64,000 nt of DNA from positions 248,001 to 312,000 of IMG/VR virus record IMGVR_UViG_3300032334_002567; one strand, given 5' to 3'. Both the position numbers and the translations under genes were made by a program. Numbering within the stretch: position 1 is the first letter of the stretch; the number at the start of each line of letters is the position of its first letter. Positions 743-52,402 of this stretch are shown piece after piece. The notes beneath the pieces are model-generated. The model was given only the letters and a program-made list of their open reading frames with translations. It searched no databases and was not told where the DNA came from.

Positions 743-3700
743 ATGGGAACATTTGCAAACAATAAAGACAATAAAACTACTATCAGAATGTCTGGTGGTA
801 AGTTTTTTATAAAGTACAATAACTCTTTAACACTGGGCGGATATGGATCAACGATAAGCAACTTTAATCTGACCCCTGTTATTAACTACCAAAAATTAAA
901 TTATTCATTAAGCGTTTCTGGTTCTTCTCTCACGTTAACCGATACACAAATAAACCAAATACAAGCACTTAATCCTGACGGATTGCTAATAGAAAGCAAC
1001 CAAAACAGTATAGATCTACAAACCGGACAATCAATCAGTTTTAGTCTATATTACCCAACATCTGCCACAAAATTAAGACAAGGTGGAAGTATAGTTTTAT
1101 CTATTCTATCATCATTGTACTACTCGATGGTGAAGAAAGATGTACAGGATATACCCTCAAAAATAAGCGCCAGTTTAGGAATAGATATTTCCCAATATGT
1201 AGGTAGTCAAAATGACACAACACCGTCAGGAACAGTTGCTGAGACTATTAGTAGACTTCAGGTTTTATCAACAGCTTCCCAATCTAATATTTCAAATTCT
1301 ACATTTACTCATGTTCTAGATAGTATCAGTGAAATAATAGGTTCAGGTGTTTCTGCCGCTACACCCACGCAGTTTTTTAGCAATAACGCATCAGATATTG
1401 TTACGAAGATTCAGAAAAAAGCATTGGGTCTAGCAGATAATCAAAGCGTTCCAAATCCAACGGCATTATCGAACTTGGCTCAGAACATAAATTCTATAGC
1501 TCAAAATCAAGTTGACCAAACCAACGCAGGCAATATTGTTTCTTCTATAGTCTATTCTTCTCAAGTATTACAAAGCATAGCAACTCCACTTACAAATTCT
1601 ATAACTTCACAACAGATAAATTCTGCGGCATCAAGTGTTATATCGAGTTTGACACCAACAGCCACACCAACACTAACTAATACACCGATACCAGCAACAA
1701 ATACACCTACGCCAACTAATACACCCATACCAGCAACAAGCACACCTACACCGACTAACACACCCATACCAGCAACAAGCACACCTACGCCAACTGCCGC
1801 AGTGTCGATTTCATATGCTAACAAGTTTGGTTACGGTAACGGCAGCGTTGATGCAGCGTACTCGGTTAGCGGCACTGGAACGATAACCGCTAGCCTGACA
1901 GGAGGTGGTGACAACTCTGACACTCGGCTCTGGCTTCTGATCGGAAGCTCTGGATCTCTCAGTTACACGGTGACAGCCAACAGCGAGGACGGTTACGACG
2001 GTGGGCGGTTGTACTTGACATCGGCATCACCGGCTGTGCACTCCTTTGGTCAGCATTGGGCTATCCCGTCAATCTCTGGGCTGACGAATGTGTCGGGGGC
2101 TGTTTCTGGTACATCAACTTCTAGTGGCACGATAGCAGTGACCGCCGGTCAATATTTGGTACTGCGGTACACCAAGGATGATAGTTCGGTGCAAGGCACA
2201 GACAGTATCACGGCAACTTTGACGCTCACGGCTGGCACACCTACACCGACTAACACACCGACTAACACACCGACCAACACACCTGTACCACCAACAGCCA
2301 CACCTACACCAACTAACACACCTATACCAGCAACAAATACACCTACACCAACTAGTACGCCGATACCACCAACACCAACACCAACCAACACACCAACCAA
2401 CACACCAACCAACACACCAACAAATACACCTACACCAACTAGTACGCCGATACCACCAACACCAACACCAACCAACACACCAACCAATACACCAACTAAC
2501 ACACCCACACCAACTAACACACCCACACCAACTAGTACGCCGATACCAGCAACAAATACGCCTACACCAACTAATACACCTATACCAGCAACAAATACAC
2601 CTACACCAACACCTACATCTGCACCATCTGGCATTATTCTTAGTACAAACACAACGCCAAGAGCACTAATGGGTGGTGGAGTAAATTATAATCCAACATT
2701 CATAAACAGCGACTACAGAGCATACTATTCTTCTTCAATTGTGAACTACCAAAACACTAGCATACTAAACGGCACACTTCCTCTACAGAATTGGAACAAC
2801 ATAAACAATTACGGATTGAACATAAGTCCATATGTATTCAATTTTATGATTCCTACGGTTTTGACAAAATATAGGTTGTGGAATGGATTTATGGCCAATG
2901 TCTACAGAGAATTCGGAGAAGGTCGTCAATATTCCGACATTGGCAATCAGACGCCCCAAGGCTGGACGATACAGGGAAGTAATGATGATCTGAATTGGAC
3001 AACAATAGACACAAGGACAAGCCAGGCAAGACTGCCATACGCAACAAGCGTTGATCCATCCGTAAGTCCGTATAGTGAATTCACTATCGCATCTCCAGCG
3101 GCATACAAATCCTACAGAATGAACATAACTGATACCGGTAGAGATGCTTACGATTGTGGAAAGGGCGGATGCTCGTATGACACGCAAATAGGAGAAATAC
3201 AGTTATGGGGCTATGAAAGCCCGAGTACAAGTTGTGCATTGCACGGCTACAATACCAATCTTCCATTCGTAAAGTATCTTAACAGTTCGGGTGCCGTTAG
3301 CGACTCCGTGTTTGTAAACGCATTTAGACAGTCCACATCAAGAGGAAACCTTTCCAACACTTGGACTTGGTGGAATACGGGCAAGCCAGTCGGAACAATA
3401 ATAGATACCGGATATATGGGGGTTGATTATCCTATCACGATCACTTCCTACAAGATGTGGACTTCGGGCATCAATAGTTGGAAGTGGTATGGAGCAAACA
3501 CGTTTGGAAGTTGGACCTTGTTTGATACAAGAACAAGTGTGTCATCTGGCTCCAATGTTACCTTTTCTATAAGCTCTCCTACTTCTTACAAATATTACAA
3601 GATAGAACTTACAGGATCTTCTAACCAACCTTGTTATAAGTCTGGGTGTTGGAATGAAGGAAGAGTGAACGACATACAAATAAACGGATATTTAACATAA
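743..3700 (+). CDS. Pro/Thr-repeat virion adhesin/fibre-like protein with C-terminal discoidin (F5/8 type C)-like domains
   Basis: 985 aa; two PTNTP/PTPT repeat blocks; C-terminal domains with [20 protein letters not shown]...IGEIQLWG pattern typical of galactose-binding-like folds. Confidence 0.65.
1653..2625 (+). repeat. two blocks of low-complexity ACACC(A/T)AC repeats encoding Pro-Thr linkers
   Basis: tandem ACACCAACC/ACTAACACA units at about 1653-1795 and 2236-2625. Confidence 0.9.
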
Positions 3701-3709
3701 AGGTGATAT

Positions 3710-5119
3710 ATGCCAACAGCAAGAGCATTGGTCGGAGGAGGCGTAGTTTATGACAATACAAATGTTGATTCAAAATATCAACCATACTACCAGTTCAGAG
3801 CAACAGACAGATATCAGATGTATACAGGTAGAAATAATGGTTATATGTATCACGGAAGTGCGAGCATAATGCCCGCATCAACTCTGTACGACGGCAAACC
3901 CGGAGGGAATTATTACTGTAGCAATTTGTTCTCCGGGATTCTTCCGTACCAGAATCCGAACAACCAATGCTATCTGCTCGACAACCTAGGTCAATTAAAT
4001 AGTCCGAGTATCTCTTACTACATGATGTTCGGATTGCCCGTTACCATAACAAAGTACAGATTGTGGAATGGATTTATAGCCAATGTTAAAGCAAATTTGA
4101 GATGGGCATCGGTAAATGATTTCGGCAATGAAACTCCTCAAGACTGGGCGCTTTATGGCACGAACGACGGATTTTCTTGGAATCTTATTGATTCAAGATC
4201 AAGTCAGGCAAGATTGCCGTATGCGACAGCCAATCATGCAAAAGATAGTTCATACAGCGAATTCACAATATCCAATCCGACTCCGTACAAAACCTACAAA
4301 CTTGCTGTGACCAAAGGGGGGAGAACAGCCACCGATTGTAGAAAAAGCGGTTGTAGTTACGCCATGTATCAACTTGGAGAAATGCAACTTTGGGGATATG
4401 AAAGTCCAGACACCAATTGTTCCATACATGGAATTGATACGATATTCCCAAAAGCTGTATATCCCACAAGCAACGGATCTTTAAGTACAGAATCAGTAAT
4501 AACTTACCAAGGAATTAGTTCCTTTTCAAAGATTTTTACTTTATGTCCATCTTACATTGAAGTTAGATCTGATGCCAAGGATGGCGGGGGTAACGCTTGG
4601 CCAGGAAGAGACTCTCACCCTCAAAGCGAATTCGTAAATGGCTCATGGGTGTCCAAATATTGCATACAATCAATTTATTACTATGGATACGGTGTGCCCA
4701 GCAGAATATCTTATGCGTGGGCGAGATCATATGAAGGATGGGGATTTAATTCTAGTCTAACATATGTTCCTATTGGCACCATATGGGGAACAGGCTACAT
4801 AGACTTTGGAGCGTCCGTAACCATTTCTTCTTACAAAATCAGAGGGGGAGCAGAGTGGTATAATGGAGATATTTCTCCCAATTCTTGGACATTATATGGA
4901 TCCAACGATTTCTCGTCCTGGACCAGCATAAGCAACATATCTTCCAATTCCGCCATGAATTATTTGACATACACAAATTTCACTATATCATCCCCATCAT
5001 CGTACAGGTATTATAAAATGGAAATAAAAGGTGGCAAAGCTCAACAATGCGGAAAAAGCGGATGCACCGCATACACGGCCAGAATTTACGACATGCAGAT
5101 AGTGGGGAAAATATCATGA
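3710..5119 (+). CDS. tandem discoidin-like domain protein, paralogous to the C-terminus of 743..3700
   Basis: shares [35 protein letters not shown] and CxKSGC segments with the upstream gene. Confidence 0.7.
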   Translation: MPTARALVGGGVVYDNTNVDSKYQPYYQFRATDRYQMYTGRNNGYMYHGSASIMPASTLYDGKPGGNYYCSNLFSGILPYQNPNNQCYLLDNLGQLNSPSISYYMMFGLPVTITKYRLWNGFIANVKANLRWASVNDFGNETPQDWALYGTNDGFSWNLIDSRSSQARLPYATANHAKDSSYSEFTISNPTPYKTYKLAVTKGGRTATDCRKSGCSYAMYQLGEMQLWGYESPDTNCSIHGIDTIFPKAVYPTSNGSLSTESVITYQGISSFSKIFTLCPSYIEVRSDAKDGGGNAWPGRDSHPQSEFVNGSWVSKYCIQSIYYYGYGVPSRISYAWARSYEGWGFNSSLTYVPIGTIWGTGYIDFGASVTISSYKIRGGAEWYNGDISPNSWTLYGSNDFSSWTSISNISSNSAMNYLTYTNFTISSPSSYRYYKMEIKGGKAQQCGKSGCTAYTARIYDMQIVGKIS

Positions 5120-40775: not shown

Positions 40776-41924
40776 ATGGCTCGGACGAAGTCTGCCGAAG
40801 CGGTGTTGATTGAGGCTTGCTTGGCTGCTGGCACTGCTCACAACTACCGTATGTTTCAAAGGACGAACGAGTATCAGCTTTATACTGACAACAATCCCGG
40901 CAAGGATATCAGCCAGCCGTTCTTCAATAGCGTGAAGAATCGTTGGGTTCGTAACCGTCCCGGCACTACTGTTACCGCCGCCCCGGCTGTTGGTTCGGCT
41001 GTGGCTGTGGATGCTCCTTCTGTCCCGTCTCTCCCCCCTGCATTCGCTTTTGAGCCTGCGACTTGGACATACGATGCGGAGGCCATTGATATGATTCCTA
41101 CGTTGGATAAGCACTTCGTTATTACCGAAGAGAACAAGGCACTCGTTGACCTTGTTCAGAAGCGTAGCAAGGTTAGCAACGTCAACGTGCGGCTTGTCGG
41201 CCCCGCTGGCTGCGGCAAGACCAGCTTCGCTATGCAGTACGCAGCTAACCGTAAGCTGCCTGCGATGGTGATGGACTGTGCCAACGTGCGTGAGCCGCGA
41301 GACTGGTTCGGCTACCGTAAGTTCGGTGCCGATACCAAGGACATTGTGTGGCATGAAAGTATGTTCATCAAGATGATCGAAACGGCTGGAAGCGTTGTTG
41401 TGCTGGACGAGTTGAATCGTGTCAGTCCGATGGTTGTGAATACGCTGATCCCGCTGCTCGACCATCGTCGGTCAACGTATCTGGAAGAGGCTGGGCGCCG
41501 GATCACGGTGGCAGAGGGCGTTACCTTCTGGGCTGCGTTGAATGAAGGCAACCAATTCACCGGAACTATCGCTCTGGACGAGGCTCTTAGCGACCGCTTC
41601 GGCCTTGTCGTGGAGTGCAAGTTTCTTGAGTCCAAGACCGAAAGCCATGTTCTTCGCCAGAAGACCGGCCTCGACCTTGATAGCTGCAAGAAGTTGGTAG
41701 ACGTTGCCAACCAAGTGCGGGCTAAGTCGCAGTCGGACAGCGTGGATGCCTTTAGCAAGCCTATCAGCACCCGTATGCTGGAAGAGGCTGCGATGGCAAT
41801 GAGCATCGGTGGTACTAAGACCATGCACTACACGCTGCTGAACCACTTCAGTGCGGACGGTGGTGTGACTAGCCAGCGAGACGGCCTGCGGAAGCTGCTG
41901 GTTGGCAAGTTCGGGGAGATTTGA
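40776..41924 (+). CDS. CobS/CbbQ/NirQ-like AAA+ ATPase
   Basis: GPAGCGKTS, VLDELNR, ALNEG..FTGT..LD.AL.DRF, ISTR. Confidence 0.88.
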   Translation: MARTKSAEAVLIEACLAAGTAHNYRMFQRTNEYQLYTDNNPGKDISQPFFNSVKNRWVRNRPGTTVTAAPAVGSAVAVDAPSVPSLPPAFAFEPATWTYDAEAIDMIPTLDKHFVITEENKALVDLVQKRSKVSNVNVRLVGPAGCGKTSFAMQYAANRKLPAMVMDCANVREPRDWFGYRKFGADTKDIVWHESMFIKMIETAGSVVVLDELNRVSPMVVNTLIPLLDHRRSTYLEEAGRRITVAEGVTFWAALNEGNQFTGTIALDEALSDRFGLVVECKFLESKTESHVLRQKTGLDLDSCKKLVDVANQVRAKSQSDSVDAFSKPISTRMLEEAAMAMSIGGTKTMHYTLLNHFSADGGVTSQRDGLRKLLVGKFGEI

Positions 41925-41931
41925 TCGACGC

Positions 41932-41968
41932 TGCCTGCCGGGGGAGACTAATAACCCCCGGCAGGCAG
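41932..41968. terminator. GC-rich hairpin between the AAA and vWA genes
   Basis: TGCCTGCCGGGGG...CCCCCGGCAGGCA. Confidence 0.55.
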
Positions 41969-42051
41969 GCTAATTTTAAATAATTGTCCTCTAATTTTAT
42001 TGTACCCTAACAAACTACAGTTCAACGGCACTCACTCTCAGGAGACGAACG

Positions 42052-44259
42052 ATGAAGGCTGAATGGTTCAAGCGGTGGGACGATAAGGCCGAGGATGATG
42101 TTGAAATCATCGAGGTTGATTCTTCTACTGGCTACTTCGGTCAGGAGGAGGAAGAGGAGACGGACAATCGGTCTGGCTGGTGGAGCCAGTTCCACGGTGG
42201 CGGCAAGTCCCGGTCTTATACCCCCGTCAAGAGTACCAGTGCGTACCTTCGGTCTCATTCGGGTTCTCAGGACAATGGTCGCCGTGCTGATCGTAACGAA
42301 GACCTTCTGGAGGTTATCAAGGAGGTCAGCAAGACGATCAATCTCACCATCAATAGCGATGGTGGCAAGGATGAGAAGAATCTCAGTGTCCGGTATAGCG
42401 ACGGGTGCGTTGTGAATGACCTGTCCTCACCGATTCTGTATGTCTCTCCCAAGGTTCTCATGGACGATAGCGGTGTTGTTCACGACAAGTCCAGCGATGC
42501 TTACTATGCTGGGCTTGATGCCTTGAACGGTCAGGCCATGCTGTGCAGCTTCATGCGAAAGAGCGTTGGCCGTAGGGCTAACTATCAGTACCAGTCTTGT
42601 GACAACTGGGCTGTTCGTAATCTTTACATGACCGATCTTCAGAGTACGGCTGGCAATGAGATTTATTCTGATTGGCCCGGCTTTCGCTCCTATGTCGATT
42701 CCCAGCAGAAGGTTTTCAACCAGAGCAGGGAAGCGATCATGGGTGCGTTCGCTAGCCCCGATCAGAACATTGACAACTTTGTCAATCTGATTTGTCACAA
42801 CCGTCTGTCTCAGGATCGTATTGACTATCACGATTACTTCCAGACAGAGATTGCCGACCGGCTTGATGCAGCGGATTGTCTTCTCAATGAGACGATGGAC
42901 ACGCCGTGCGAGAATGACGAGCGGTTCCAGCGGTCTAGCGATCTGTACAATCAGATTCAGCAGCTTCTTGATCTGACTCAGCCGCCCCCGCAGCAGCAGC
43001 CGCAGGACGGTGATGACGAGCAGGATGATGATCAGCAGCAGGACGGCCAGCCGCAGGGCAGCAAGGGCCAGAATGACGATGACAGCGATTCCGATGGTCA
43101 GGATGGGGATGCTGATGGGGATGCTGATGGTGACGGTCAGGATGCTGACGGTGATGGTGATAGTGACTCTGATAGCGATGCCGATGGTGGCAATAGTAAC
43201 AACCCCGGTAAGGGTCGTAGCACTCCCGGCAACGGGAAGGGCAAGCCCAAGACCGACATTCAGAGCATCGACACCAACTCCAACAGCCCGAAGAATCGGG
43301 AGTTCACTGGTGACAATAGTTACAATGAGACTACTGTCGCTGGTGACTATGCTGCTAGTCACATTGACCCCAGCCAGCAGTTGAGGGAGCGGGAGCAGCA
43401 TCAGCCGGATGCACTCCGGTCGATTCAAGATAAGCAGCTTGAAGGTGCGACTTACACTCGCATCGTGCCGCCAGTGAATCCCGAAACGAGGGAGCGGTAC
43501 AAGCGAGTTGTTAGTGCTAATCGTGGAGCGATCAGTCGTGTAAAGAACTGCTTCGACTTCCATAACACTGACTTCGCTCTGTCAAGCTATGGTTTGACGG
43601 TTGGCGGTCTTGACGAGCAGAGCCTTCATAAGGTTCAGTTCGGTGAGACAGAGCGGCTGTACGAGCGTAAGGATATCCTTTCGAAGAAGAAGTGGCTGGT
43701 GACGCTGCTTATCGACCAGAGCGGTTCGATGGCAGGCCGGAAGATGGAACAGGCTAGGGAGTTGGCGATCATCTTCTCCGAAGCTTTGAAGTCTCTCCGT
43801 GACACTGACTTCAGCGTGTACGGTTTCTCTACGGGTGGTAACACTAGGATTAACACCTATTGTTACAAAGACACCCAGACGAAGAAACTGGAAGCGTTGA
43901 GCGAGGCGTGTGAACACCAGAACACGGGTCTTGGGTTCCATATCGCTCATGTTGGGGATAAGATGCTCAAGCAGTATCCCAACCATGAGAATCGGATTCT
44001 GTTTGTGATTACTGACGGTGAACCTAACATGACTCCCACTCCGACAATGAATGGGTATCAGCATACGGCTCACTGTTGTAATCTCTTGCGGAAGCGTGGT
44101 ATCAACGTGTACGGCATCGGCATTGCCAATGCGTTCGGTGATCCCACTGGTCAGCAGTTGTTCGGCAACGGTAACTACACCGTGTTGAACGATGTTCGGT
44201 CTACGCTGAACGTGCTTACCAATCGGTTGCGGAACTTCTTCAAGAAGATGAAGAGGTAG
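42052..44259 (+). CDS. CobT-like vWA domain protein
   Basis: acidic D/G/Q linker; IDQSGSM (MIDAS), VITDGEP, GIGI. Confidence 0.85.
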   Translation: MKAEWFKRWDDKAEDDVEIIEVDSSTGYFGQEEEEETDNRSGWWSQFHGGGKSRSYTPVKSTSAYLRSHSGSQDNGRRADRNEDLLEVIKEVSKTINLTINSDGGKDEKNLSVRYSDGCVVNDLSSPILYVSPKVLMDDSGVVHDKSSDAYYAGLDALNGQAMLCSFMRKSVGRRANYQYQSCDNWAVRNLYMTDLQSTAGNEIYSDWPGFRSYVDSQQKVFNQSREAIMGAFASPDQNIDNFVNLICHNRLSQDRIDYHDYFQTEIADRLDAADCLLNETMDTPCENDERFQRSSDLYNQIQQLLDLTQPPPQQQPQDGDDEQDDDQQQDGQPQGSKGQNDDDSDSDGQDGDADGDADGDGQDADGDGDSDSDSDADGGNSNNPGKGRSTPGNGKGKPKTDIQSIDTNSNSPKNREFTGDNSYNETTVAGDYAASHIDPSQQLREREQHQPDALRSIQDKQLEGATYTRIVPPVNPETRERYKRVVSANRGAISRVKNCFDFHNTDFALSSYGLTVGGLDEQSLHKVQFGETERLYERKDILSKKKWLVTLLIDQSGSMAGRKMEQARELAIIFSEALKSLRDTDFSVYGFSTGGNTRINTYCYKDTQTKKLEALSEACEHQNTGLGFHIAHVGDKMLKQYPNHENRILFVITDGEPNMTPTPTMNGYQHTAHCCNLLRKRGINVYGIGIANAFGDPTGQQLFGNGNYTVLNDVRSTLNVLTNRLRNFFKKMKR

Positions 44260-44281
44260 ACTTGGTAAGATGGGCAAGACC

Positions 44282-44309
44282 TTTACAAAGTCTTGTTCTG
44301 TGTTATGAT
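44282..44309 (+). promoter_or_regulatory. sigma70-type promoter
   Basis: TTTACA-16 bp-TATGAT with extended TG. Confidence 0.55.
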
Positions 44310-44356
44310 GTTCGTCGGTTTTGTTTTCGGTTGTACCCTACTAGGAAAGGAATCTT

Positions 44357-44737
44357 ATGAGGACGTTTGTTATTGTCGCTGTTGCTGTTGTGATCGGTGG
44401 TCTTTGCCAGCAGGATGCTCATGCTTGGCCCCGATATCGCAACAGTAATAGCAATTACACTACGCAGTCTTCTTCGACACCGAAGGTGACTTCGTACACC
44501 AACAGCTACGGTGCTAATGATACTAGCTCCGCCCAAGGCGTGGCTGAGATCATGGCTCGTACTGGTCGTGTTGGCCACTGGGGTGGCAACCGTGGTTACG
44601 AGGGTTGTGGTTCTGGCTCTTCGCAGGAAGCTGCCTACAGGAACTGCTGCTTTTCAAACAGCGGTATGACTACGGTCGATGTTGGTTATGCCCAAGGTAG
44701 CAATGGTCAGTGGTATTGTTGCCGTCGATATCGATAG
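44357..44737 (+). CDS. secreted Cys/Gly-rich protein of a type I associate with Planctomycetota
   Basis: signal peptide; AQGVAE.MA..G..GH.GG..GYEG.G.GSS...A..NCCF......D.G.A.G..G.WY.C.RY. Confidence 0.7.
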   Translation: MRTFVIVAVAVVIGGLCQQDAHAWPRYRNSNSNYTTQSSSTPKVTSYTNSYGANDTSSAQGVAEIMARTGRVGHWGGNRGYEGCGSGSSQEAAYRNCCFSNSGMTTVDVGYAQGSNGQWYCCRRYR

Positions 44738-44792
44738 TCAGTTCAGGATTAATCCCGTCAGGATGACTGCATCTAATAACAAGGAGAACATA

Positions 44793-45383
44793 ATGTCCGA
44801 CAATAATTATAATGAAGTATACGTGGCTGTTCGAATCAAGGGCAGTCATCCTGACGGGGATCCCGACAAGTCGATTGAGGTGGTGGAGGTTGTCAAGGGA
44901 CATCGGCTCAGCAAGAGTTATGCAAAACTTCTTGCAAGCCCAACGTTTGCTATGAACATTGGTATCAATGACGTAGTGGAACTTGGACCTGCTGACCCAG
45001 ATTTCTTGGATGAGAATCCTGACTTCTCCAGCAATTTATATGATCCAGACGAGATGAAACAGAAGGCAGCTCAGGGTCTGCTCTTTGAAGCGAAGAAGGT
45101 TATCACCCACGGCACGTATAAAATCGGCGTTCGTTTCGTCACAGCAAAAGATGAAGACGTAGGGATGATTTCTGATCATTTCAATAAGAACAATGCAATT
45201 TTTGAAATGTGTATGCCAAGTGTTGGCACGGTCAGCTTCACCAGAGAGACTCCTTTTTCGTCAGCGGTAGAGACTTTACAGGCCGCACCATATGTGGTAA
45301 CCTGTGCCGTCTGTTTTGATCCCAGTTGTTTTCCAGAAATTGGATTCAGCGAGGATCTAATTCCAAAAAATGATGAAGACTGA
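44793..45383 (+). CDS. hypothetical protein
   Basis: AAGGAG RBS before ATG 44793. Confidence 0.65.
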   Translation: MSDNNYNEVYVAVRIKGSHPDGDPDKSIEVVEVVKGHRLSKSYAKLLASPTFAMNIGINDVVELGPADPDFLDENPDFSSNLYDPDEMKQKAAQGLLFEAKKVITHGTYKIGVRFVTAKDEDVGMISDHFNKNNAIFEMCMPSVGTVSFTRETPFSSAVETLQAAPYVVTCAVCFDPSCFPEIGFSEDLIPKNDED

Positions 45384-45388
45384 TCACT

Positions 45389-45606
45389 TCCGCTGCGAAA
45401 GCAGCCACCTTGCCTGAGGTGCCCTTTCCGCAGGGAATCAGGCCGTCGTGTTCATGAGGCGTACCCTTTCCGTCGTCGGGGTGCATGAACTCACTTTGAT
45501 ATTGCATGTGCTGTTTGGACTCGACAGTAAATATCATGGTCAACCCGTACCAGTGTCACTGTGGACTCATACCCCACGGTGTGTCCGTGCGACTCGGATG
45601 ACGGGC
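45389..45606 (+). ncRNA. candidate multi-hairpin structured RNA upstream of tRNA-Lys
   Basis: five consecutive helices including GCTGC-GAAA-GCAGC, GCCTGA/TCAGGC, GTTCATG/CATGAAC, TGATATT/AATATCA, CCCGT/ACGGG. Confidence 0.5.
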
Positions 45607-45638
45607 ATAAATGGATTTATGGGACTGATACTGCAAAA

Positions 45639-45907
45639 GGAAGCGTAGCTCAGTTGGTAGAGCATCGGACTTCAAATAGGAGTGCTTATCGGGAAACTGA
45701 TAAAGTAGAACTGCTCAAATTCGGTGAACGCTTAACTGCCAATACCGAGCCAAGCCTAGAAATAGGAAGGTGTAGAGACTTGACGGGCAGCACCTAAAGT
45801 TGAAAAACAATGGTGAAGGTAAAGTCCAGACCACAAACAGAAATGGTAACGAAAGTTATAGTGGTAAGTTAATCCGTTGGTCCTGGGTTCGAGTCCCAGC
45901 GCTTCCA
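45639..45907 (+). tRNA. tRNA-Lys(UUU) interrupted by a group I intron (exons 45639-45672 and 45869-45907)
   Basis: GGAAGCG/CGCTTCC acceptor; spliced loop CT-TTT-AA; T arm CTGGG-TTCGAGT-CCCAG. Confidence 0.85.
45673..45868 (+). ncRNA. self-splicing group I intron (IC3-like), 196 nt, no ORF
   Basis: P1 ACTTC/GGAGT with U.G at the 5' splice site; CAAATTCGGTGAA, ATACCGAGCCAAG, GTGTAGAGACTTGACGG and AAGGTAAAGTCC core elements; terminal G. Confidence 0.85.
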
Positions 45908-45939
45908 TTGTTATTGTTTTCAAGGACGTAAGGACAACA

Positions 45940-46116
45940 ATGAAAAAGAAAAAGCCAAGCTATAAGAAATTGAAGAAGGCGTTTTTGGCGGTTGTAAACA
46001 ATACGAATCTTGATAGTGAAAAATGTGCTGAGTATTCTTTCGTGCTTAAGATCTGGGAGCGTTTGAAGAAAGAACAAAAGAAGAAGCAGGACAACGAACC
46101 GCTTTTACCTGTGTGA
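45940..46116 (+). CDS. small basic hypothetical protein
   Basis: AAGGA RBS before ATG 45940. Confidence 0.5.
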   Translation: MKKKKPSYKKLKKAFLAVVNNTNLDSEKCAEYSFVLKIWERLKKEQKKKQDNEPLLPV

Positions 46117-46123
46117 TTAGGTT

Positions 46124-46208
46124 GCCGAAGTGGCGAAATTGGCGAAACGCAAGGGACTTAAAATCCCTCACATTAGAAACACTGCGGGTTCGAATCCCGC
46201 CTTCGGCA
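46124..46208 (+). tRNA. tRNA-Leu(UAA)
   Basis: GCCGAAG/CTTCGGC acceptor, AGGGA-CTTAAAA-TCCCT, long variable arm. Confidence 0.92.
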
Positions 46209-46246
46209 CTGGTTTGATTTTTATAACTTGTGAATAAGGAGATAAC

Positions 46247-46516
46247 ATGAAGTATGCTATTGCGTTCTTGACTATGTTTGGCGCTTTTAATGTTTGCAAT
46301 TATGTGAACGCTGATCAGATTCAAATCAATGACGATGAGATCAATAAGATTCTTAAGGCTAAAGAGATTGTTCGGGGGATGGTAAACTTTCCCGATACCC
46401 TTGTGTTCCATGAGTTCTATACCAAGGTCAGCGGAAACACTGTGACGCTTAAGTTTACCGCTAAGAATGCTTTTGGTGTGCCAGAGACGCATATCAAAGA
46501 TATTAAAGTCAATTGA
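46247..46516 (+). CDS. small exported protein
   Basis: signal-like N-terminus; P.T..F...V...F.AKNAFG motif. Confidence 0.65.
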   Translation: MKYAIAFLTMFGAFNVCNYVNADQIQINDDEINKILKAKEIVRGMVNFPDTLVFHEFYTKVSGNTVTLKFTAKNAFGVPETHIKDIKVN

Positions 46517-46668
46517 TATTAAATCCGGCCTACCGCAGATAGCATTCACTGTTCGCTCGGTGAGTACGTCCCGGCAGGCCGGATTTCTCTTAATTTAGAA
46601 TTAGGGTGCATAAAATAATTGTACCCTATAATTCTAGCGGTCTCTCTAAACTTTACCCGGAGTATCCT

Positions 46669-46968
46669 GTGAAACTTCTAACTAAAGAACTGCGGAACAA
46701 GCTGCCTCCCCTCTATGCTAATGATGGAAAGGGTGAGGACGCTGTGGCAATCGTCAAGTTTTTCGATGCTTTTGGAAGCTGGACTTGGTGGGCTTCTGAG
46801 TTTGATGGTGATGACACATTCTTCGGGGTTGTTGAGGGACACGAACGAGAGTTCGGCTATTTCAGCTTGAGTGAGTTGGAAAGTTTGAAGATTGGTGGGG
46901 GGTGCCCACGAATCGAAAGAGATTTATATTTTGTCCCCAAGCCTTTGAAGGAATGTAAAAATGAGTAA
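46669..46968 (+). CDS. DUF2958 family protein
   Basis: LP.LY.......A.VKFF...SWTW.ASE.D....FFG.V.G.E.E.GYFSL.EL...IERDLYF.P. Confidence 0.8.
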   Translation: MKLLTKELRNKLPPLYANDGKGEDAVAIVKFFDAFGSWTWWASEFDGDDTFFGVVEGHEREFGYFSLSELESLKIGGGCPRIERDLYFVPKPLKECKNE

Positions 46969-47434
46969 CCTTGTATTGTACCCTTATTATCTTGATGAGT
47001 ATCAGCTTTATTGCTTCGATGATGAACGAACAAACTTGAAGGAAGAGCTTTTTGTTGAAACGATTACAGCAATGATTCATAAGTTGCTAGATTTGAAGGG
47101 GGTAAAGAATCCCCGAGAAGGATTTGAACTAACATTTAGCACAAGTCCTATGAGTGATGCTGACGCTACTTTGACTTGGGTAAGAAGTAACAACCCAACA
47201 GTCAAGCCAGATACTCCCCGAAGTGGAGAAGCAGGCAATTTCTACGCTGTAGAATTAGAAGGTCAGTATATGGAAGGTTGGCTGTGTCCTGCTCTTGCTA
47301 AGTATATGAATGGATATGCACCTTCTAAGATTTATGTGAAGGTTGATAATCTTCCCAAGGGTGTCAATCCGATTTGGGACATTTCTGAGTCTGATAGTCC
47401 TACCGCTTATGTTGGGCCTTACGCTAAGGAGTAA
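46961..47434 (+). CDS. DUF6717-like protein
   Basis: PY......FDD....L.EE.FV...F.L.FS..P...G..Y......GWLCPAL.KY...AP..IYV. Confidence 0.7.
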   Translation: MSNLVLYPYYLDEYQLYCFDDERTNLKEELFVETITAMIHKLLDLKGVKNPREGFELTFSTSPMSDADATLTWVRSNNPTVKPDTPRSGEAGNFYAVELEGQYMEGWLCPALAKYMNGYAPSKIYVKVDNLPKGVNPIWDISESDSPTAYVGPYAKE

Positions 47435-47439
47435 ATGTG

Positions 47440-47688
47440 ATGGAAACTGTTTCGCAGACAGAGAAAAGATGGACTGATGTTGCTAAGAGTCAATTTCTAA
47501 ATAAGAAGATTGTTGCCGTCAGGTATCTTTCTCAAAAAGAAGCAGATTCATTAGGGTGGTACCATCGTCCAATTGTTTTGCAGTTGGACGATGGTAACCT
47601 CATTTTCCCCAGCAGAGATGATGAGGGAAATGATGGTGGTTCACTTTTTACGAATGATGATAAACAACCAGTAATCCCTGTTATTTAA
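47440..47688 (+). CDS. hypothetical phage protein
   Basis: VRY....E....GW..RP....LDDG....PS.DDEGNDGG.LF. Confidence 0.7.
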   Translation: METVSQTEKRWTDVAKSQFLNKKIVAVRYLSQKEADSLGWYHRPIVLQLDDGNLIFPSRDDEGNDGGSLFTNDDKQPVIPVI

Positions 47689-47700
47689 GAAGAGGAAACT

Positions 47701-48204
47701 ATGGGAACAAGATCAATGCACGTTTTCCCTTCAGCTACGAAGGGCAAGTGGATTACTCAGTATTTTCAGTTTGATGGTTCTCCTGCTTATCAGCTTGAGA
47801 AGTTTCTTAGAGATAGTCAGTGCTTTCTAAGAAATCTGACGCTGATTATTGCTTCTGAAAAGAAGATGTCTCCAGATAATGTGCAATTGTTTACAGATTA
47901 TCTTCGTAAGTATTATGCTTGGCGCAGTTTTGATACCCATCATTCAATTGGTAATTCTTGTGAAGTCGATTCTTATGCACTAAAAGACTTTCAAGATCAG
48001 TGGTGTGAATGGGCCTATGAATGGGACAATAACGCTAATCTGAAGATTACCCGTCTTGAGGGTGATTACCCAGCAGTTATTTGTCCTTTGACTGATCTAA
48101 CAAAGTTCCAGTTAGATGGCCCTACAGGCTGGTTTGACGAGTCCAACTTTAAAAAGATGCCTGAAATCATTATGGAAGAGTTTGATGCTCTTTCGGAAAT
48201 CTAG
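47701..48204 (+). CDS. hypothetical phage protein
   Basis: MGTRS....Y.Q.DG.P ... EWAY pattern. Confidence 0.7.
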   Translation: MGTRSMHVFPSATKGKWITQYFQFDGSPAYQLEKFLRDSQCFLRNLTLIIASEKKMSPDNVQLFTDYLRKYYAWRSFDTHHSIGNSCEVDSYALKDFQDQWCEWAYEWDNNANLKITRLEGDYPAVICPLTDLTKFQLDGPTGWFDESNFKKMPEIIMEEFDALSEI

Positions 48205-48290
48205 CTAATTTGGATAAAATAGATGATTTAGACCCTGTAAAATAATTGTACCCTAAGAAAAAAGTTTGTGATCTAAAAAAGGGACAAATA

Positions 48291-48764
48291 ATGCCGAAAA
48301 CAAAAGTAGACAAGCTAAAGGGTGATGACGGCAAGGCTCTTTCAAAGCTCCCTAATGCTACTAGGGCTTTTATTCTTGATCTATTTGAAAAGAATGGATT
48401 CAAGGAAGTCACTATTAGCTTTAGTGGAGAAGGTGATGACGGTCAAATTGATGACCTTGACGTTCATGGTGGTGTAAGGGAATCTTTGCAGGATTTGATC
48501 ACAGTTCCCGATGAAGTCCTCAATGAGCTTGAGAAGTGGCCTTTGTCGCATGACGGGTATAAGATAAATCCACTGGTGAGCATCAGTGATTTTCTTGAGC
48601 AAGTCAGTGGTTTTTGGATCAACTACTGTGGAGTTGATTGGGTGAATGGTGAGGGCGGAACAGGATACATCAGGTATTCTGTTGATAAAAAAGGTTTGAA
48701 AGTTCGTATGGAGGTTTCGGAATGGGAGCGGGTTGAAGGATATACCCAAGCTGGTGATCTCTAA
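48291..48764 (+). CDS. DUF6878-like protein
   Basis: V.I.FSG.GDDGQI ... W.N.EGG.G. Confidence 0.65.
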   Translation: MPKTKVDKLKGDDGKALSKLPNATRAFILDLFEKNGFKEVTISFSGEGDDGQIDDLDVHGGVRESLQDLITVPDEVLNELEKWPLSHDGYKINPLVSISDFLEQVSGFWINYCGVDWVNGEGGTGYIRYSVDKKGLKVRMEVSEWERVEGYTQAGDL

Positions 48765-51265: not shown

Positions 51266-52402
51266 ATGGCTGCTACGGCTACTGTGGTTGATTCCGCTAG
51301 TCTTTATTTCCGTGAGGGTACGAGCGATAAGGTTTATCATGCTACCCTTGAGGACGCTGGTTCCGGTTATGTCGTGAACTTCTCTTATGGTCGCCGGGGA
51401 AGCACTCTCAAGACTGGTTCCAAGACGGCCCGCCCTGTTTCTATGGCAGAGGCTAGGAAGGTCTTTGATCGGCTTGTTGCCGAAAAGACTGGCAAGGGCT
51501 ACCAGTATATGACTTCTTCTAGTCACGGTACTCCCGGTGGAGTTGCTGCCTCTAATCGTCATATCCCCACCGTTGTGCAGACCGCTCCTGCTGTTAGCCA
51601 GTGCGTTCTTCTCAACCCCATCAACCCGGATCACATTGAAACCTATTTGCGGGGAGATGAGTGGGTTGCCCAGCCCAAGTTGGACGGCGTTCGCTTTATG
51701 CTTCGTAATGAAAGCGGAGGCATCACAGCTATCAACCGCAAGGGTGGATCAGTGGCAGTTCCCAATGAAATTATTGAATGTATCGAAGCTGCGAGTTCCT
51801 ACTACGAGGAAGGTCTGCCTGACTTCTTTATCGACGGCGAGTTGATCGGTAGCACCTACTACGTTTTCGATATTCTTGAGCATGAAGGCGACAAGATTAC
51901 CGGACTGAATGTGGTGAACCGAATGGAGATTCTTCGGACTCTGTTCGATGATCTGGAATCGGACAATTTGAAGCTGGTGGATATTGTCGAAGGTAGGGAA
52001 AATAAGACGAAGCTCTATGTGCAGCTTCAAAGAGATAAGAAGGAAGGGGTTGTTTTCAAGTATAGGGAAGCGGCTTATACGACTGGTCGCCCTGCCAGCG
52101 GTGGCAACTACATGAAGCACAAGTTTTATGACACCGCTAGTTGCATCGTTTCAATGACGAATGGAACCAAGCGTAGTGTTGCTTTGAAGGTTCTTGAAAA
52201 AGGCATGAATGTTGCGATTGGGAACGTCACCATTCCGGCGAACCACCCGATCCCAAGTATGGGCGATATTGTGGAAATCAAGTATCTCTATGCCTATAAG
52301 AACGGCTCTCTTTACCAGCCGATCTATTTGGGAAAGAGAACTGATCTGACTTATTCGGACTGCAAGTACGATCAACTCAAGTTCAAGTCAGAAGATGACT
52401 GA
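51266..52402 (+). CDS. WGR-domain ATP-dependent DNA ligase
   Basis: N-terminal SDKVY...YGRRG...KGY WGR domain; QPKLDGVR (motif I), IDGEL, YVFDIL, EGVVFK, K.KF and C-terminal OB fold. Confidence 0.88.
   Translation: MAATATVVDSASLYFREGTSDKVYHATLEDAGSGYVVNFSYGRRGSTLKTGSKTARPVSMAEARKVFDRLVAEKTGKGYQYMTSSSHGTPGGVAASNRHIPTVVQTAPAVSQCVLLNPINPDHIETYLRGDEWVAQPKLDGVRFMLRNESGGITAINRKGGSVAVPNEIIECIEAASSYYEEGLPDFFIDGELIGSTYYVFDILEHEGDKITGLNVVNRMEILRTLFDDLESDNLKLVDIVEGRENKTKLYVQLQRDKKEGVVFKYREAAYTTGRPASGGNYMKHKFYDTASCIVSMTNGTKRSVALKVLEKGMNVAIGNVTIPANHPIPSMGDIVEIKYLYAYKNGSLYQPIYLGKRTDLTYSDCKYDQLKFKSEDD

What the first reader, a model, noticed from the sequence alone, without database searches (positions are those of the whole stretch)
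45639..45907. Phage tRNA-Lys(UUU) split by a compact group I intron in the anticodon
Seen: removing 45673-45868 restores a 7-nt CUUUUAA loop. P1 places a U.G pair at the splice site, the intron ends in G, and the core resembles IC3 tRNA introns. Established: classic bacterial tRNA group I introns occur in Leu(UAA), fMet, Ile(CAU) and Arg(CCU), and tRNA-Lys(UUU) is the target of the anticodon nuclease PrrC. Inference: an unusual host tRNA for such an intron, while the neighbouring Leu(UAA) is intron-free. The unspliced precursor might be a nuclease-resistant reservoir.
Basis: partly seen in the sequence, partly recalled or inferred. Interest (0 to 1): 0.7.

Follow-up and report, generated by a model that had tools for sequence, protein, structure and literature searches.

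The report
Self-splicing intron inside phage lysine tRNA
A giant freshwater phage carries a lysine tRNA gene interrupted in its anticodon by a small, well-conserved self-splicing (group I) intron; it is an ordinary kind of intron in a place the literature I could search does not list, yet the same arrangement turns up in more than 100 bacterial species and at least 16 other phage contigs.

Summary
Window 45639-45907 (+) is a tRNA-Lys(UUU) gene split between anticodon nucleotides 34 and 35 by a 196-nt intron with no ORF (45673-45868).

- **Spliced product:** removing the intron gives a 73-nt tRNA-Lys(ttt) by ARAGORN.
- **Intron identity:** it passes Rfam Intron_gpI (52 bits, cut-off 50, E 2e-12).
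- **Structure:** every core helix, including the P3/P7 pseudoknot, is backed by compensatory changes across 133 related tRNA-borne introns.
- **Relatives:** it aligns end to end with bacterial tRNA-Arg(CCU) and tRNA-Leu(UAA) introns, so it is Azoarcus/Anabaena-type (IC3-like).

"Unusual host tRNA" holds only against the literature. A strict pattern found the same Lys(UUU) intron in 101 tRNA genes: about 86 in bacterial genomes and 15 in phage contigs, not counting this phage or L114. Four bacterial genomes checked had no intron-free tRNA-Lys(UUU) gene.

In phage contigs this intron lineage also sits in Leu(UAA), Arg(UCU), Lys(CUU), Asn, Pro and Met tRNAs and in capsid genes. Its 3-nt 3'-exon guide changes to match each host.

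No RNA evidence of splicing was obtained. The "nuclease-resistant reservoir" idea is untested.

Verdict: a new member of a known kind.

The parts
45639..45672 (+). 5' exon of tRNA-Lys(UUU): acceptor 5' strand, D arm, anticodon stem 5' strand, and C32 U33 U34
   Evidence: ARAGORN on the spliced sequence. The D arm UAGCUCAGUUGGUAGAGCA is shared with many Lys(UUU) genes.
45669..45683 (+). P1. Exon ACUU (45669-45672) pairs with the internal guide GAGU (45680-45683), with U34.G at the 5' splice site. C45673-G45679 extends the helix.
   Evidence: Read from the sequence. The three splice-site-proximal pairs (CUU with GAG) form in 128-131 of 133 related introns; the fourth pair, A.U, forms in 18 of 133. 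The 5' splice site after U was imposed by my search, so its constancy is not evidence.
45677..45679 (+). P10 guide UAG, which pairs with the first three 3'-exon bases UUA (45869-45871)
   Evidence: The guide tracks the host. It is UAG with UUA (Lys UUU) or CUA (Arg UCU), UUU with AAA (Leu UAA), and AUUA with UAAU (Lys CUU). It is paired in 112-130 of 133.
45673..45868 (+). Group I intron, 196 nt, no ORF, ending in omega-G 45868
   Evidence: Rfam RF00028, 52 bits, E 2e-12. Full-length alignment to bacterial tRNA-Arg(CCU) and tRNA-Leu(UAA) introns. Pre-tRNA fold z-score -2.98.
45686..45703 (+). P2 hairpin, 7 bp, with GAAA loop L2 (45693-45696)
   Evidence: RNAalifold predicts it, with compensatory changes. 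113-129 of 133 paired, with up to 6 pair types per position.
45711..45716 (+). P3 5' strand CUGCUC, pairing with 45785-45790 GGGCAG
   Evidence: 132-133 of 133 paired at all six positions, with up to 5 pair types per position. 0 broken among 29.
45720..45749 (+). P4 (45720-45725 with 45744-45749) enclosing P5 (45729-45740)
   Evidence: The innermost P4 pair covaries (GC 101, UA 16, UG 13, CG 3). The P5 pair 58/67 is CG 95, GC 29, UA 7.
45750..45770 (+). P6/P6a with a GAAA loop
   Evidence: Most of this segment was fixed by my search pattern, so only positions 85/92 and 86/91 are informative. Both covary.
45777..45781 (+). P7 5' strand GACUU, pairing with 45822-45826 AAGUC (pseudoknot with P3; guanosine-binding helix)
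   Evidence: All five pairs form in 133 of 133. The fifth pair covaries: GC 75, AU 28, UA 24, CG 6.
45785..45790 (+). P3 3' strand GGGCAG
   Evidence: See the P3 5' strand.
45792..45814 (+). P8, with an internal loop CCUAAAG/CAAUGG that resembles the 11-nt GAAA-tetraloop receptor, plus a GAAA-capped tip
   Evidence: The family consensus is CCUAAG...UAUGG. The P8 base pairs covary. The tertiary contact with L2 is inferred.
45822..45826 (+). P7 3' strand AAGUC, preceded by J8/7 GAAGGUA
45831..45864 (+). P9 (CCAC/GUGG) enclosing two GAAA-capped hairpins, P9a and P9b
   Evidence: P9b has 132-133 of 133 paired, with 3-6 pair types.
45869..45907 (+). 3' exon: U35 U36 A37 A38, anticodon stem 3' strand, variable loop, T arm, acceptor 3' strand and discriminator A73
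   Evidence: RNAalifold also pairs the two exon flanks as the anticodon stem.
46124..46209 (+). Neighbouring intron-free tRNA-Leu(UAA). Its 5' anticodon half GGGACUU would fit the same P1 guide.

Best explanation
This is a working phage tRNA-Lys(UUU) gene carrying an Azoarcus/Anabaena-type (IC3-like) self-splicing group I intron between U34 and U35.

**Proposed mechanism (inferred from the anatomy and from established group I chemistry)**
1. The gene is transcribed as a 269-nt precursor.
2. The tRNA body folds, and the anticodon stem holds the two exons together.
3. The intron folds into its P3-P9 core. The guide GAGU pairs with exon ACUU to form P1.
4. Free guanosine bound at P7 attacks after U34, the U of the U.G pair.
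5. The guide UAG pairs with the 3'-exon bases UUA to form P10, and omega-G 45868 enters the G site.
6. The 3'-OH of U34 attacks after G45868. This joins the exons into a 73-nt tRNA, which host enzymes then trim, give a CCA end and modify.

**Role of the tRNA.** It reads AAA, the phage's preferred lysine codon.

**Nature of the intron.** It is most likely a tolerated selfish element. It has no homing endonuclease. It belongs to a lineage that moves between tRNA anticodon loops that share ...CUU or ...CU at the 5' side, and also into phage protein genes, by small changes in its guide.
For: **The exons make a normal tRNA**
- Spliced, they give a canonical tRNA-Lys(ttt) with A73.

**It is a group I intron**
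- Rfam group I match over the cut-off, E 2e-12.
- RNAalifold on 29 tRNA-borne relatives recovers P2-P9 and the exon anticodon stem. 32 of 44 pairs show compensatory change.
- Across 133 unique relatives P3 is paired in 132-133 of 133 at all six positions. The variable P7 pair is always paired, with 4 pair types. P9b, P5 and P2 also covary.
- It aligns over its full length with bacterial tRNA-Arg(CCU) introns (68-69% identity) and tRNA-Leu(UAA) introns (74-75%).

**Selection has kept both tRNA and intron intact**
- A diverged relative phage, L120 (neighbouring proteins 34-36% identical), has the orthologous intron-bearing tRNA-Lys. It shows compensatory changes in P2, P3, P4 and P9b, and a different acceptor stem.
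- Four bacterial genomes with the same Lys(UUU) intron have no uninterrupted tRNA-Lys(UUU) by a pattern whose CUU version finds their tRNA-Lys(CUU). The family should therefore splice in vivo.
- The phage uses AAA for 67% of Lys codons in its long ORFs. Eight of its 10 other tRNAs have U34 and read A-ending codons.

**The guide matches the exons**
- The P10 guide matches each host's 3' exon.
Against: - There is no direct evidence of splicing. No RNA run held this phage's tRNA region, and the one metatranscriptome with an exact match covers only 45400-45549.
- The Rfam score is only 2 bits above the cut-off.
- P5 in this copy has a C-C mismatch at position 57/68. P8 departs from the consensus receptor (CCUAAAG/CAAUGG rather than CCUAAG/UAUGG).
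- P1 is short (4 bp) and P10 is only 3 bp, one of them a wobble pair. This is normal for the family.
- The IC3 label rests on architecture and on homology to unnamed bacterial tRNA introns. I could not retrieve a named reference IC3 sequence with the tools.
Confidence: 0.85

Rival explanations
1. Dead relic. The intron no longer splices and the tRNA-Lys gene is a pseudogene that the phage carries without use.
For: No RNA evidence of the spliced form. The Rfam score is marginal at 52 against 50. There is a C-C mismatch in P5 and an off-consensus P8 receptor.
Against: All catalytic-core helices are intact. An orthologue in the diverged phage L120 shows compensatory rather than random substitutions in both intron and tRNA stems. 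This is the phage's only tRNA-Lys, and AAA is its preferred Lys codon.
Confidence: 0.07
2. One reading: besides being spliced, the intron-bearing precursor serves as a pool that anticodon nucleases of the PrrC type cannot cut, and it releases fresh tRNA-Lys during infection.
For: PrrC targets tRNA-Lys(UUU), and phages counter tRNA-cleaving defences in several ways (PMC10264068). The precursor has no normal anticodon loop (read from the sequence). The phage encodes a T4 Rnl1-type RNA ligase (60 bits) and an AAA_33 kinase, which hints that tRNA damage matters to it.
Against: Nothing here tests it. The same intron sits in the tRNA-Lys(UUU) gene of many bacteria, where a phage counter-defence makes no sense. 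In phages the lineage is equally at home in Leu, Arg, Asn, Pro and Met tRNAs and in capsid genes, which is the pattern of a selfish element. Group I splicing is normally fast and co-transcriptional, so a standing pool is not expected (general knowledge).
Confidence: 0.06
3. A different junction, giving another anticodon or another tRNA identity.
For: ARAGORN with generic introns proposes tRNA-Val(aac) with other boundaries. The run of U's around the junction leaves some formal ambiguity.
Against: Only 45672|45869 puts a U.G pair at the end of P1, ends the intron in G and gives a 7-nt loop. 101 homologous genes have the same ...GACUU|...G|UUAAUC... junction. The conserved 3' end AGUGGUAAG| aligns across the family.
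Confidence: 0.02
4. Not a phage feature: a bacterial fragment mis-binned as viral, or a chimeric assembly.
For: The anticodon arm is identical to that of Microbacterium and Nesterenkonia tRNA-Lys(UUU) genes. CheckV rates the record only 79% complete.
Against: The tool labels it a 381-kb IMG/VR virus record. The locus is identical over 12.9 kb in a second viral contig. It lies in one 5.3-kb contig at even depth of about 125x. Genome GC is 36.5% with 10 further scattered tRNAs, unlike the high-GC bacterial carriers. I did not check phage hallmark genes myself.
Confidence: 0.03

Closest known systems
[quoted passage not shown]
   Same: Same insertion point, between nucleotides 34 and 35 of the anticodon. 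Same 5' exon end GGACUU and the same P1 guide GAGU. Same compact ORF-less architecture. 74-75% identity over the full length to bacterial tRNA-Leu(UAA) introns found here. The nearest single relative is a phage Leu(UAA) intron at 85%.
   Different: The host tRNA is Lys(UUU). The P10 guide is UAG (for UUA) rather than UUU (for AAA). The genome is a phage.
Alphaproteobacterial tRNA-Arg(CCU) intron and Azoarcus tRNA-Ile(CAU) intron (Reinhold-Hurek & Shub 1992, as cited in PMC4033280 and PMC3984707)
   Same: Same core. It aligns end to end at 68-69% identity with tRNA-Arg(CCU) introns recovered here. It has a GAAA L2, a P8 receptor-like loop, GAAA-capped P9 hairpins, a short P1 and a conserved ...GUGGUAxG 3' end. 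From memory only, the Azoarcus ribozyme shares strings such as CCGAGCCAAGC and GGUGUAGAGACUAGACGG. I could not verify this with the tools.
   Different: Those introns lie after nucleotide 36 (Arg CCU) or elsewhere in the loop, in other tRNAs, in cellular genomes.
Phage group I introns in protein genes (T4 td/nrdB/sunY, Twort, SPO1; subgroup IA2)
   Same: Self-splicing introns in phage genomes. The same IC3-like lineage as here also splits the capsid gene of marine podovirus KT997847, twice.
   Different: The classical phage introns are IA2, often carry homing endonuclease genes and sit in protein genes. A 2014 review states that no phage tRNA gene with an intron was then known. This one is IC3-like, has no ORF and sits in a tRNA.
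T4 Stp/PrrC/Rnl1-Pnkp conflict over tRNA-Lys(UUU)
   Same: The same tRNA species is involved. The phage encodes an Rnl1-family ligase.
   Different: No link between the intron and nuclease evasion was shown. No PrrC or host is known.

Membership tests
Group I intron (Rfam RF00028) | Covariance-model score at or above the curated gathering score | tested here: met
   52.0 bits against 50, E 2.2e-12. A marginal pass.
Group I intron (Rfam RF00028) | P3-P7 pseudoknot and P4-P6 domain, supported by covariation | tested here: met
   P3 is paired in 132-133 of 133 at all six positions, with up to 5 pair types. P7 is paired in 133 of 133 and one pair shows 4 types. P4, P5 and P6a covary.
Group I intron (Rfam RF00028) | U.G wobble at the 5' splice site in P1, and a terminal guanosine (omega-G) | tested here: met
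   U45672.G45680 and G45868. In the relatives these two features were imposed by my search, so only the window's own sequence counts.
Group I intron (Rfam RF00028) | Guanosine-dependent self-splicing | not testable with these tools
   This needs an in vitro assay. RNA runs gave no spliced or excised form.
IC3-type tRNA anticodon-loop introns | Sits in a tRNA anticodon loop, with the exons held together by the anticodon stem | tested here: met
   Junction between nucleotides 34 and 35. RNAalifold pairs the exon flanks.
IC3-type tRNA anticodon-loop introns | Compact core without P5abc, P2.1 or P7.1/P7.2, and no ORF | tested here: met
   All 196 nt are accounted for by P1-P9. No ORF fits inside.
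IC3-type tRNA anticodon-loop introns | GNRA loops L2 and L9, with a receptor in P8 and a docking site in P5 | tested here: inconclusive
   The motifs are present: L2 GAAA, a GAAA loop in P9b, and P8 CCUAAAG/CAAUGG against a family consensus of CCUAAG/UAUGG. The tertiary contacts cannot be tested. The window's receptor is off consensus.
IC3-type tRNA anticodon-loop introns | Homology to accepted members (tRNA-Leu UAA and tRNA-Arg CCU introns) | tested here: met
   Full-length alignment at 68-75% identity to such introns recovered from bacterial genomes.
tRNA-Lys(UUU) | Cloverleaf with anticodon UUU, a 7-nt loop and discriminator A73 | tested here: met
   ARAGORN on the spliced sequence: 73 nt.
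tRNA-Lys(UUU) | Charged with lysine and used in translation | not testable with these tools
   Only indirect support: AAA is 67% of Lys codons in long ORFs, and this is the phage's sole tRNA-Lys.
Anticodon-nuclease counter-measure | The precursor resists PrrC-type cleavage and accumulates during infection | not tested
   No host, no nuclease and no RNA data are available. Rnl1-like ligase presence is only context.

The most novel reading that the evidence does not exclude
Phages harbour a promiscuous, ORF-less, IC3-type intron lineage that the searchable literature does not describe. It has colonised at least seven tRNA isoacceptors (Leu UAA, Lys UUU, Lys CUU, Arg UCU, Asn GUU, Pro UGG, Met/Ile CAU) and also capsid genes. 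It appears to retarget through changes of a few nucleotides in its P1/P10 guide, which would be natural reverse-splicing-type transposition. Its Lys(UUU) form is also fixed in many Actinomycetota, Gemmatimonadota and Alphaproteobacteria; in the four such genomes checked, no uninterrupted tRNA-Lys(UUU) gene was found. This would overturn the textbook statement that phage introns avoid tRNA genes.
Probability: 0.45. Interest if true: 0.65.

Novelty: new member of a known kind. Interest (0 to 1): 0.5.

Why it matters
- **It extends the known host list.** Bacterial-type tRNA group I introns are listed for Leu, fMet, Ile and Arg; this adds lysine tRNAs.
- **It contradicts a review statement.** The 2014 review says phage introns occur only in protein genes.
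- **It exposes an annotation gap.** Standard tRNA finders miss such genes. ARAGORN missed this one, and the tRNAscan-SE 2.0 paper says that tool was not designed to detect group I introns. Phage and bacterial tRNA inventories, and the codon-usage or defence arguments built on them, are therefore incomplete. Genomes that seem to lack tRNA-Lys(UUU) may simply have it interrupted.
- **It offers a natural experiment.** One intron lineage is spread over many tRNA species with matching guide changes, which shows how ORF-less ribozymes change targets.
- **It is testable at the bench.** The Lys(UUU) form occurs in cultured Microbacterium and Nesterenkonia strains.
- **The tRNA is contested.** tRNA-Lys(UUU) is the target of PrrC-type nucleases, so whether the intron affects that conflict is a fair open question.

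Tried and rejected
- **RNA evidence.** Two run searches and two read-laying runs gave no spliced junction from this phage. Metatranscriptome X10 holds only 45400-45549 exactly, plus an unspliced precursor-like contig from a different intron-bearing tRNA. Many 'joints' in DNA runs are intron-less tRNA-Lys genes of other organisms with different anticodon stems. One 5.7x contig in the source run has exactly the 45672->45869 junction, but only 27 nt on one side, so I do not count it as an intron-less allele.
- **Empty-site comparison.** The neighbouring 234-aa protein found only the same phage.
- **Named IC3 reference.** Searching papers for Azoarcus-like core strings found nothing relevant. I therefore used unnamed bacterial Arg(CCU) and Leu(UAA) introns instead.
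- **Tree of 85 introns.** The window's intron is unresolved inside a loosely supported viral cluster (85/99). I do not claim a specific donor tRNA. AT-rich versus GC-rich composition may also pull viral and bacterial rows apart.
- **Window ORF 51266-52402.** It first looked like an Rnl2-type RNA ligase but is better read as an ATP-dependent DNA ligase with a WGR domain.
- **Nearby genes and signals.** No homing endonuclease lies near the intron. Promoter and terminator scans were uninformative.
- **Upstream gap 45384-45638.** Its fold is not significant (z -0.96) and Rfam finds nothing there.
- **Literature.** Nine full-text searches and several papers gave no report of a tRNA-Lys group I intron or of any phage tRNA intron. 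Subscription journals are not covered.

Full report
**1. What is there**

The window is bases 248001-312000 of a 381,443-bp IMG/VR virus record. It is linear and CheckV rates it 79% complete. GC is 36.5%. Sequencing runs that hold it are lake and freshwater metagenomes.

- At 45639-45672 lies the 5' half of a tRNA (GGAAGCG UA GCUC AGUUGGUA GAGC A UCGGA CUU).
- At 45869-45907 lies the 3' half (UUAA UCCGU UGGUC CUGGG UUCGAGU CCCAG CGCUUCC A).
- Joined, ARAGORN calls a 73-nt tRNA-Lys(ttt) with a 7-nt loop CUUUUAA and discriminator A.
- The unspliced gene is invisible to ARAGORN and to the Rfam tRNA model.
- It is the only tRNA-Lys in the record. The record has 10 other tRNAs, and 8 of them have U34.
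- In the phage's long ORFs AAA makes up 67% of lysine codons, so a UUU-anticodon tRNA fits the set.

**2. The insert is a group I intron**

Rfam RF00028 matches 45662-45849 at 52.0 bits (cut-off 50), E 2e-12. It is the only such match in the 381 kb.

By hand the 196 nt fold as follows (window coordinates are given under parts):
- P1: ACUU/GAGU, with U.G at the splice site
- P2: 7 bp, GAAA loop
- P3: CUGCUC/GGGCAG
- P4: UUCGGU/ACCGAG
- P5: a short helix
- P6/P6a: GAAA loop
- P7: GACUU/AAGUC, pseudoknotted with P3
- P8: an internal loop like the 11-nt GAAA receptor
- P9: CCAC/GUGG, enclosing two GAAA hairpins
- Four nucleotides follow P9, and the intron ends in G45868.

The whole precursor folds better than shuffles (z -2.98), and the minimum-energy fold recovers the tRNA arms and most intron hairpins.

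**3. Relatives and covariation**

I spliced every U...G candidate pair and ran ARAGORN on the products. 35 loci proved to be tRNA genes:
- Leu(UAA): 15
- Arg(UCU): 9
- Lys(UUU): this phage's second contig L100, plus L114
- Lys(CUU): 2
- Met/Ile(CAU): 4
- Asn(GUU): 1
- Pro(UGG): 1

The rest sit at recurrent sites in protein genes. Among them are the two introns that split the capsid gene of marine podovirus KT997847 (78 and 77 bits).

*RNAalifold on 29 unique tRNA-borne introns.* It independently predicts P2, P3, P4, P5, P6/6a, P8, P9, P9b and the pairing of the exon flanks. 32 of 44 pairs show compensatory change.

*133 unique introns.*
- All six P3 positions are paired in 132-133 of 133, with up to five pair types.
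- The one variable P7 pair is paired in all 133 (GC 75, AU 28, UA 24, CG 6), which supports the pseudoknot.
- P9b, P9a, P5, P6a, P8 and P2 also covary.
- Caveats: parts of P4, P6 and P7 were fixed by my search patterns and say nothing. U at -1 and the terminal G were imposed by the splice search.

**4. Where the lineage belongs**

I sampled 151 genomes of one alphaproteobacterial family. 20 of them carry group I introns:
- tRNA-Arg(CCU): about 9, the classical alphaproteobacterial case
- tRNA-Leu(UAA): about 9
- tRNA-Lys(CUU): 2
- tRNA-Lys(UUU): 1

The window's intron aligns over its whole length with these Arg(CCU) introns (68-69% identity) and Leu(UAA) introns (74-75%). Together with the architecture, this places it with the Azoarcus/Anabaena-type (IC3) tRNA introns. 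I could not compare a named reference sequence.

**5. Lysine is not a rare host in the data**

I combined the core with a 3' end ...G|UUAAU into one pattern. It hit 19 viral loci and 101 loci from species-representative bacterial genomes.

- 101 of the 118 new loci are tRNA-Lys(UUU) genes with the intron between nucleotides 34 and 35. About 86 are bacterial and 15 are viral.
- Bacterial carriers include many Microbacterium species, Nesterenkonia, Tsukamurella, Prauserella, Frankiaceae, Actinomyces oricola, Gemmatimonadales, and Pseudolabrys and other Rhizobiales.
- Four of these genomes have no uninterrupted tRNA-Lys(UUU) by a generic anticodon-arm pattern. The same pattern with CUU finds their tRNA-Lys(CUU). 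The interrupted gene is thus probably their only reader of AAA and must be spliced.
- One MAG has introns in both its Lys(UUU) and its Lys(CUU) gene.

**6. Evidence for function in the phage lineage**

- Contig L100/L242 is the same phage, 100% identical over 12.9 kb, so it is not independent support.
- L120 is a diverged relative. Its neighbouring proteins are 34-36% identical to this phage's. It has the orthologous interrupted tRNA-Lys, with compensatory substitutions in P2, P3, P4 and P9b and a different acceptor stem. That is what selection on both the ribozyme and the tRNA would produce.

**7. Guide sequences and movement**

The 5' exon end GACUU is shared by Lys(UUU) and Leu(UAA), and so is the P1 guide GAG(U). 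The three bases 5' of the guide differ with the host:
- UAG, pairing with UUA, in Lys(UUU)
- UUU, pairing with AAA, in Leu(UAA)
- UAG, pairing with CUA, in Arg(UCU)
- AUUA, pairing with UAAU, in Lys(CUU)

On a tree of 85 introns the viral copies form one loosely supported cluster (85/99) in which host tRNAs are intermingled. Lys(UUU) needs at least 6 label changes there, and well-supported branches force at least 2. The window's nearest relative is a Leu(UAA) intron at 85% identity, but its position is unresolved.

I infer repeated switches of host tRNA. I do not claim a particular donor. No homing endonuclease lies in or near the intron. The intron-free tRNA-Leu(UAA) 217 nt downstream would match P1 but not the UAG guide.

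**8. The nuclease idea**

PrrC cuts tRNA-Lys(UUU), and phage tRNAs are thought to counter such nucleases (PMC10264068). This phage encodes a T4 Rnl1-family RNA ligase (60 bits) and an AAA_33 kinase elsewhere in the genome.

That is context, not evidence for a reservoir role. The presence of the same intron in bacterial chromosomes and in many other tRNAs argues that it is primarily a tolerated mobile ribozyme.

**9. Literature**

- The 2014 review of bacterial group I introns states that all phage introns known then were in protein genes, despite many phage tRNA genes (PMC3984707).
- Reviews and the tRNAscan-SE 2.0 paper list only Leu, fMet, Ile2 and Arg hosts.
- Nine full-text searches found no report of a tRNA-Lys group I intron or of a phage tRNA intron. 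Subscription journals are not covered.

**10. Verdict**

The structural reading is right. The claim of rarity is true of the literature but not of the sequence data. The functional speculation is untested.

This is a new member of a known kind. Its modest wider interest is that it points to an unlisted and apparently common class of interrupted tRNA genes in phages and bacteria.

Noticed in passing
window 45400-45549 (within the 255-nt non-coding gap 45384-45638 upstream of the tRNA): A freshwater metatranscriptome (run X10) holds a 152-nt contig identical to this stretch, and nothing else from 42500-48400. The stretch is 51-55% GC in a 36.5% GC genome. Rfam finds nothing there and the fold is not significant (z -0.96). 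It may be an abundant leader or small RNA.
   Followed up: partly
L002 (KT997847.1) 2946-3126 and 3655-3835: The capsid gene of the deep-sea podovirus Chosvirus KM23C739 is annotated as separate 'capsid protein' pieces. Two unannotated group I introns of the same lineage lie there, one between the two pieces and one at the end of the second (78 and 77 bits). One shares a nearly identical P4-P7 core with the window's intron.
   Followed up: partly
genome 218217-218744 (L267 1366-2370) and 227462-227860 (L268); outside the window: The phage encodes a T4 Rnl1-family RNA ligase (PF09511, 60 bits) and an AAA_33 kinase. Together these could form a tRNA repair pair.
   Followed up: partly
window 51266-52402 (+): A 378-aa ATP-dependent DNA ligase with an N-terminal WGR domain. 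It also gives a weak RNA-ligase match.
   Followed up: partly
window 40776-44259 (+): A MoxR/CbbQ-type AAA+ ATPase followed by a 735-aa protein with a von Willebrand A domain, just upstream of the tRNA region.
   Followed up: no
L244 and L245 (a Rhizobiaceae MAG, handle G005): One bacterial genome has group I introns in both its tRNA-Lys(UUU) gene and its tRNA-Lys(CUU) gene. In the latter the intron lies after nucleotide 35.
   Followed up: partly
L004, L015, L095 (viral contigs): The intron-bearing tRNAs with anticodon UAA are only 73-75 nt when spliced. They lack the long variable arm expected of bacterial tRNA-Leu, so their amino-acid identity is unclear.
   Followed up: no
window 45672/45869, in DNA run X1: The probable source metagenome has a 5.7x contig with exactly the intron-less junction, against about 125x for the intron-bearing form. 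Only 27 nt fit on one side. It could be an intron-less allele or another organism's tRNA-Lys.
   Followed up: no
L003-L118 (viral contigs): Most protein-gene copies of this intron lineage sit at a few recurrent sites, for example ...GAUUUUAACACGGU|AAACACUUUGCC... and ...GGAAACUUCGGU|AAACCAUAUUGCCG.... This suggests a few favoured phage genes as targets. The genes were not identified.
   Followed up: no
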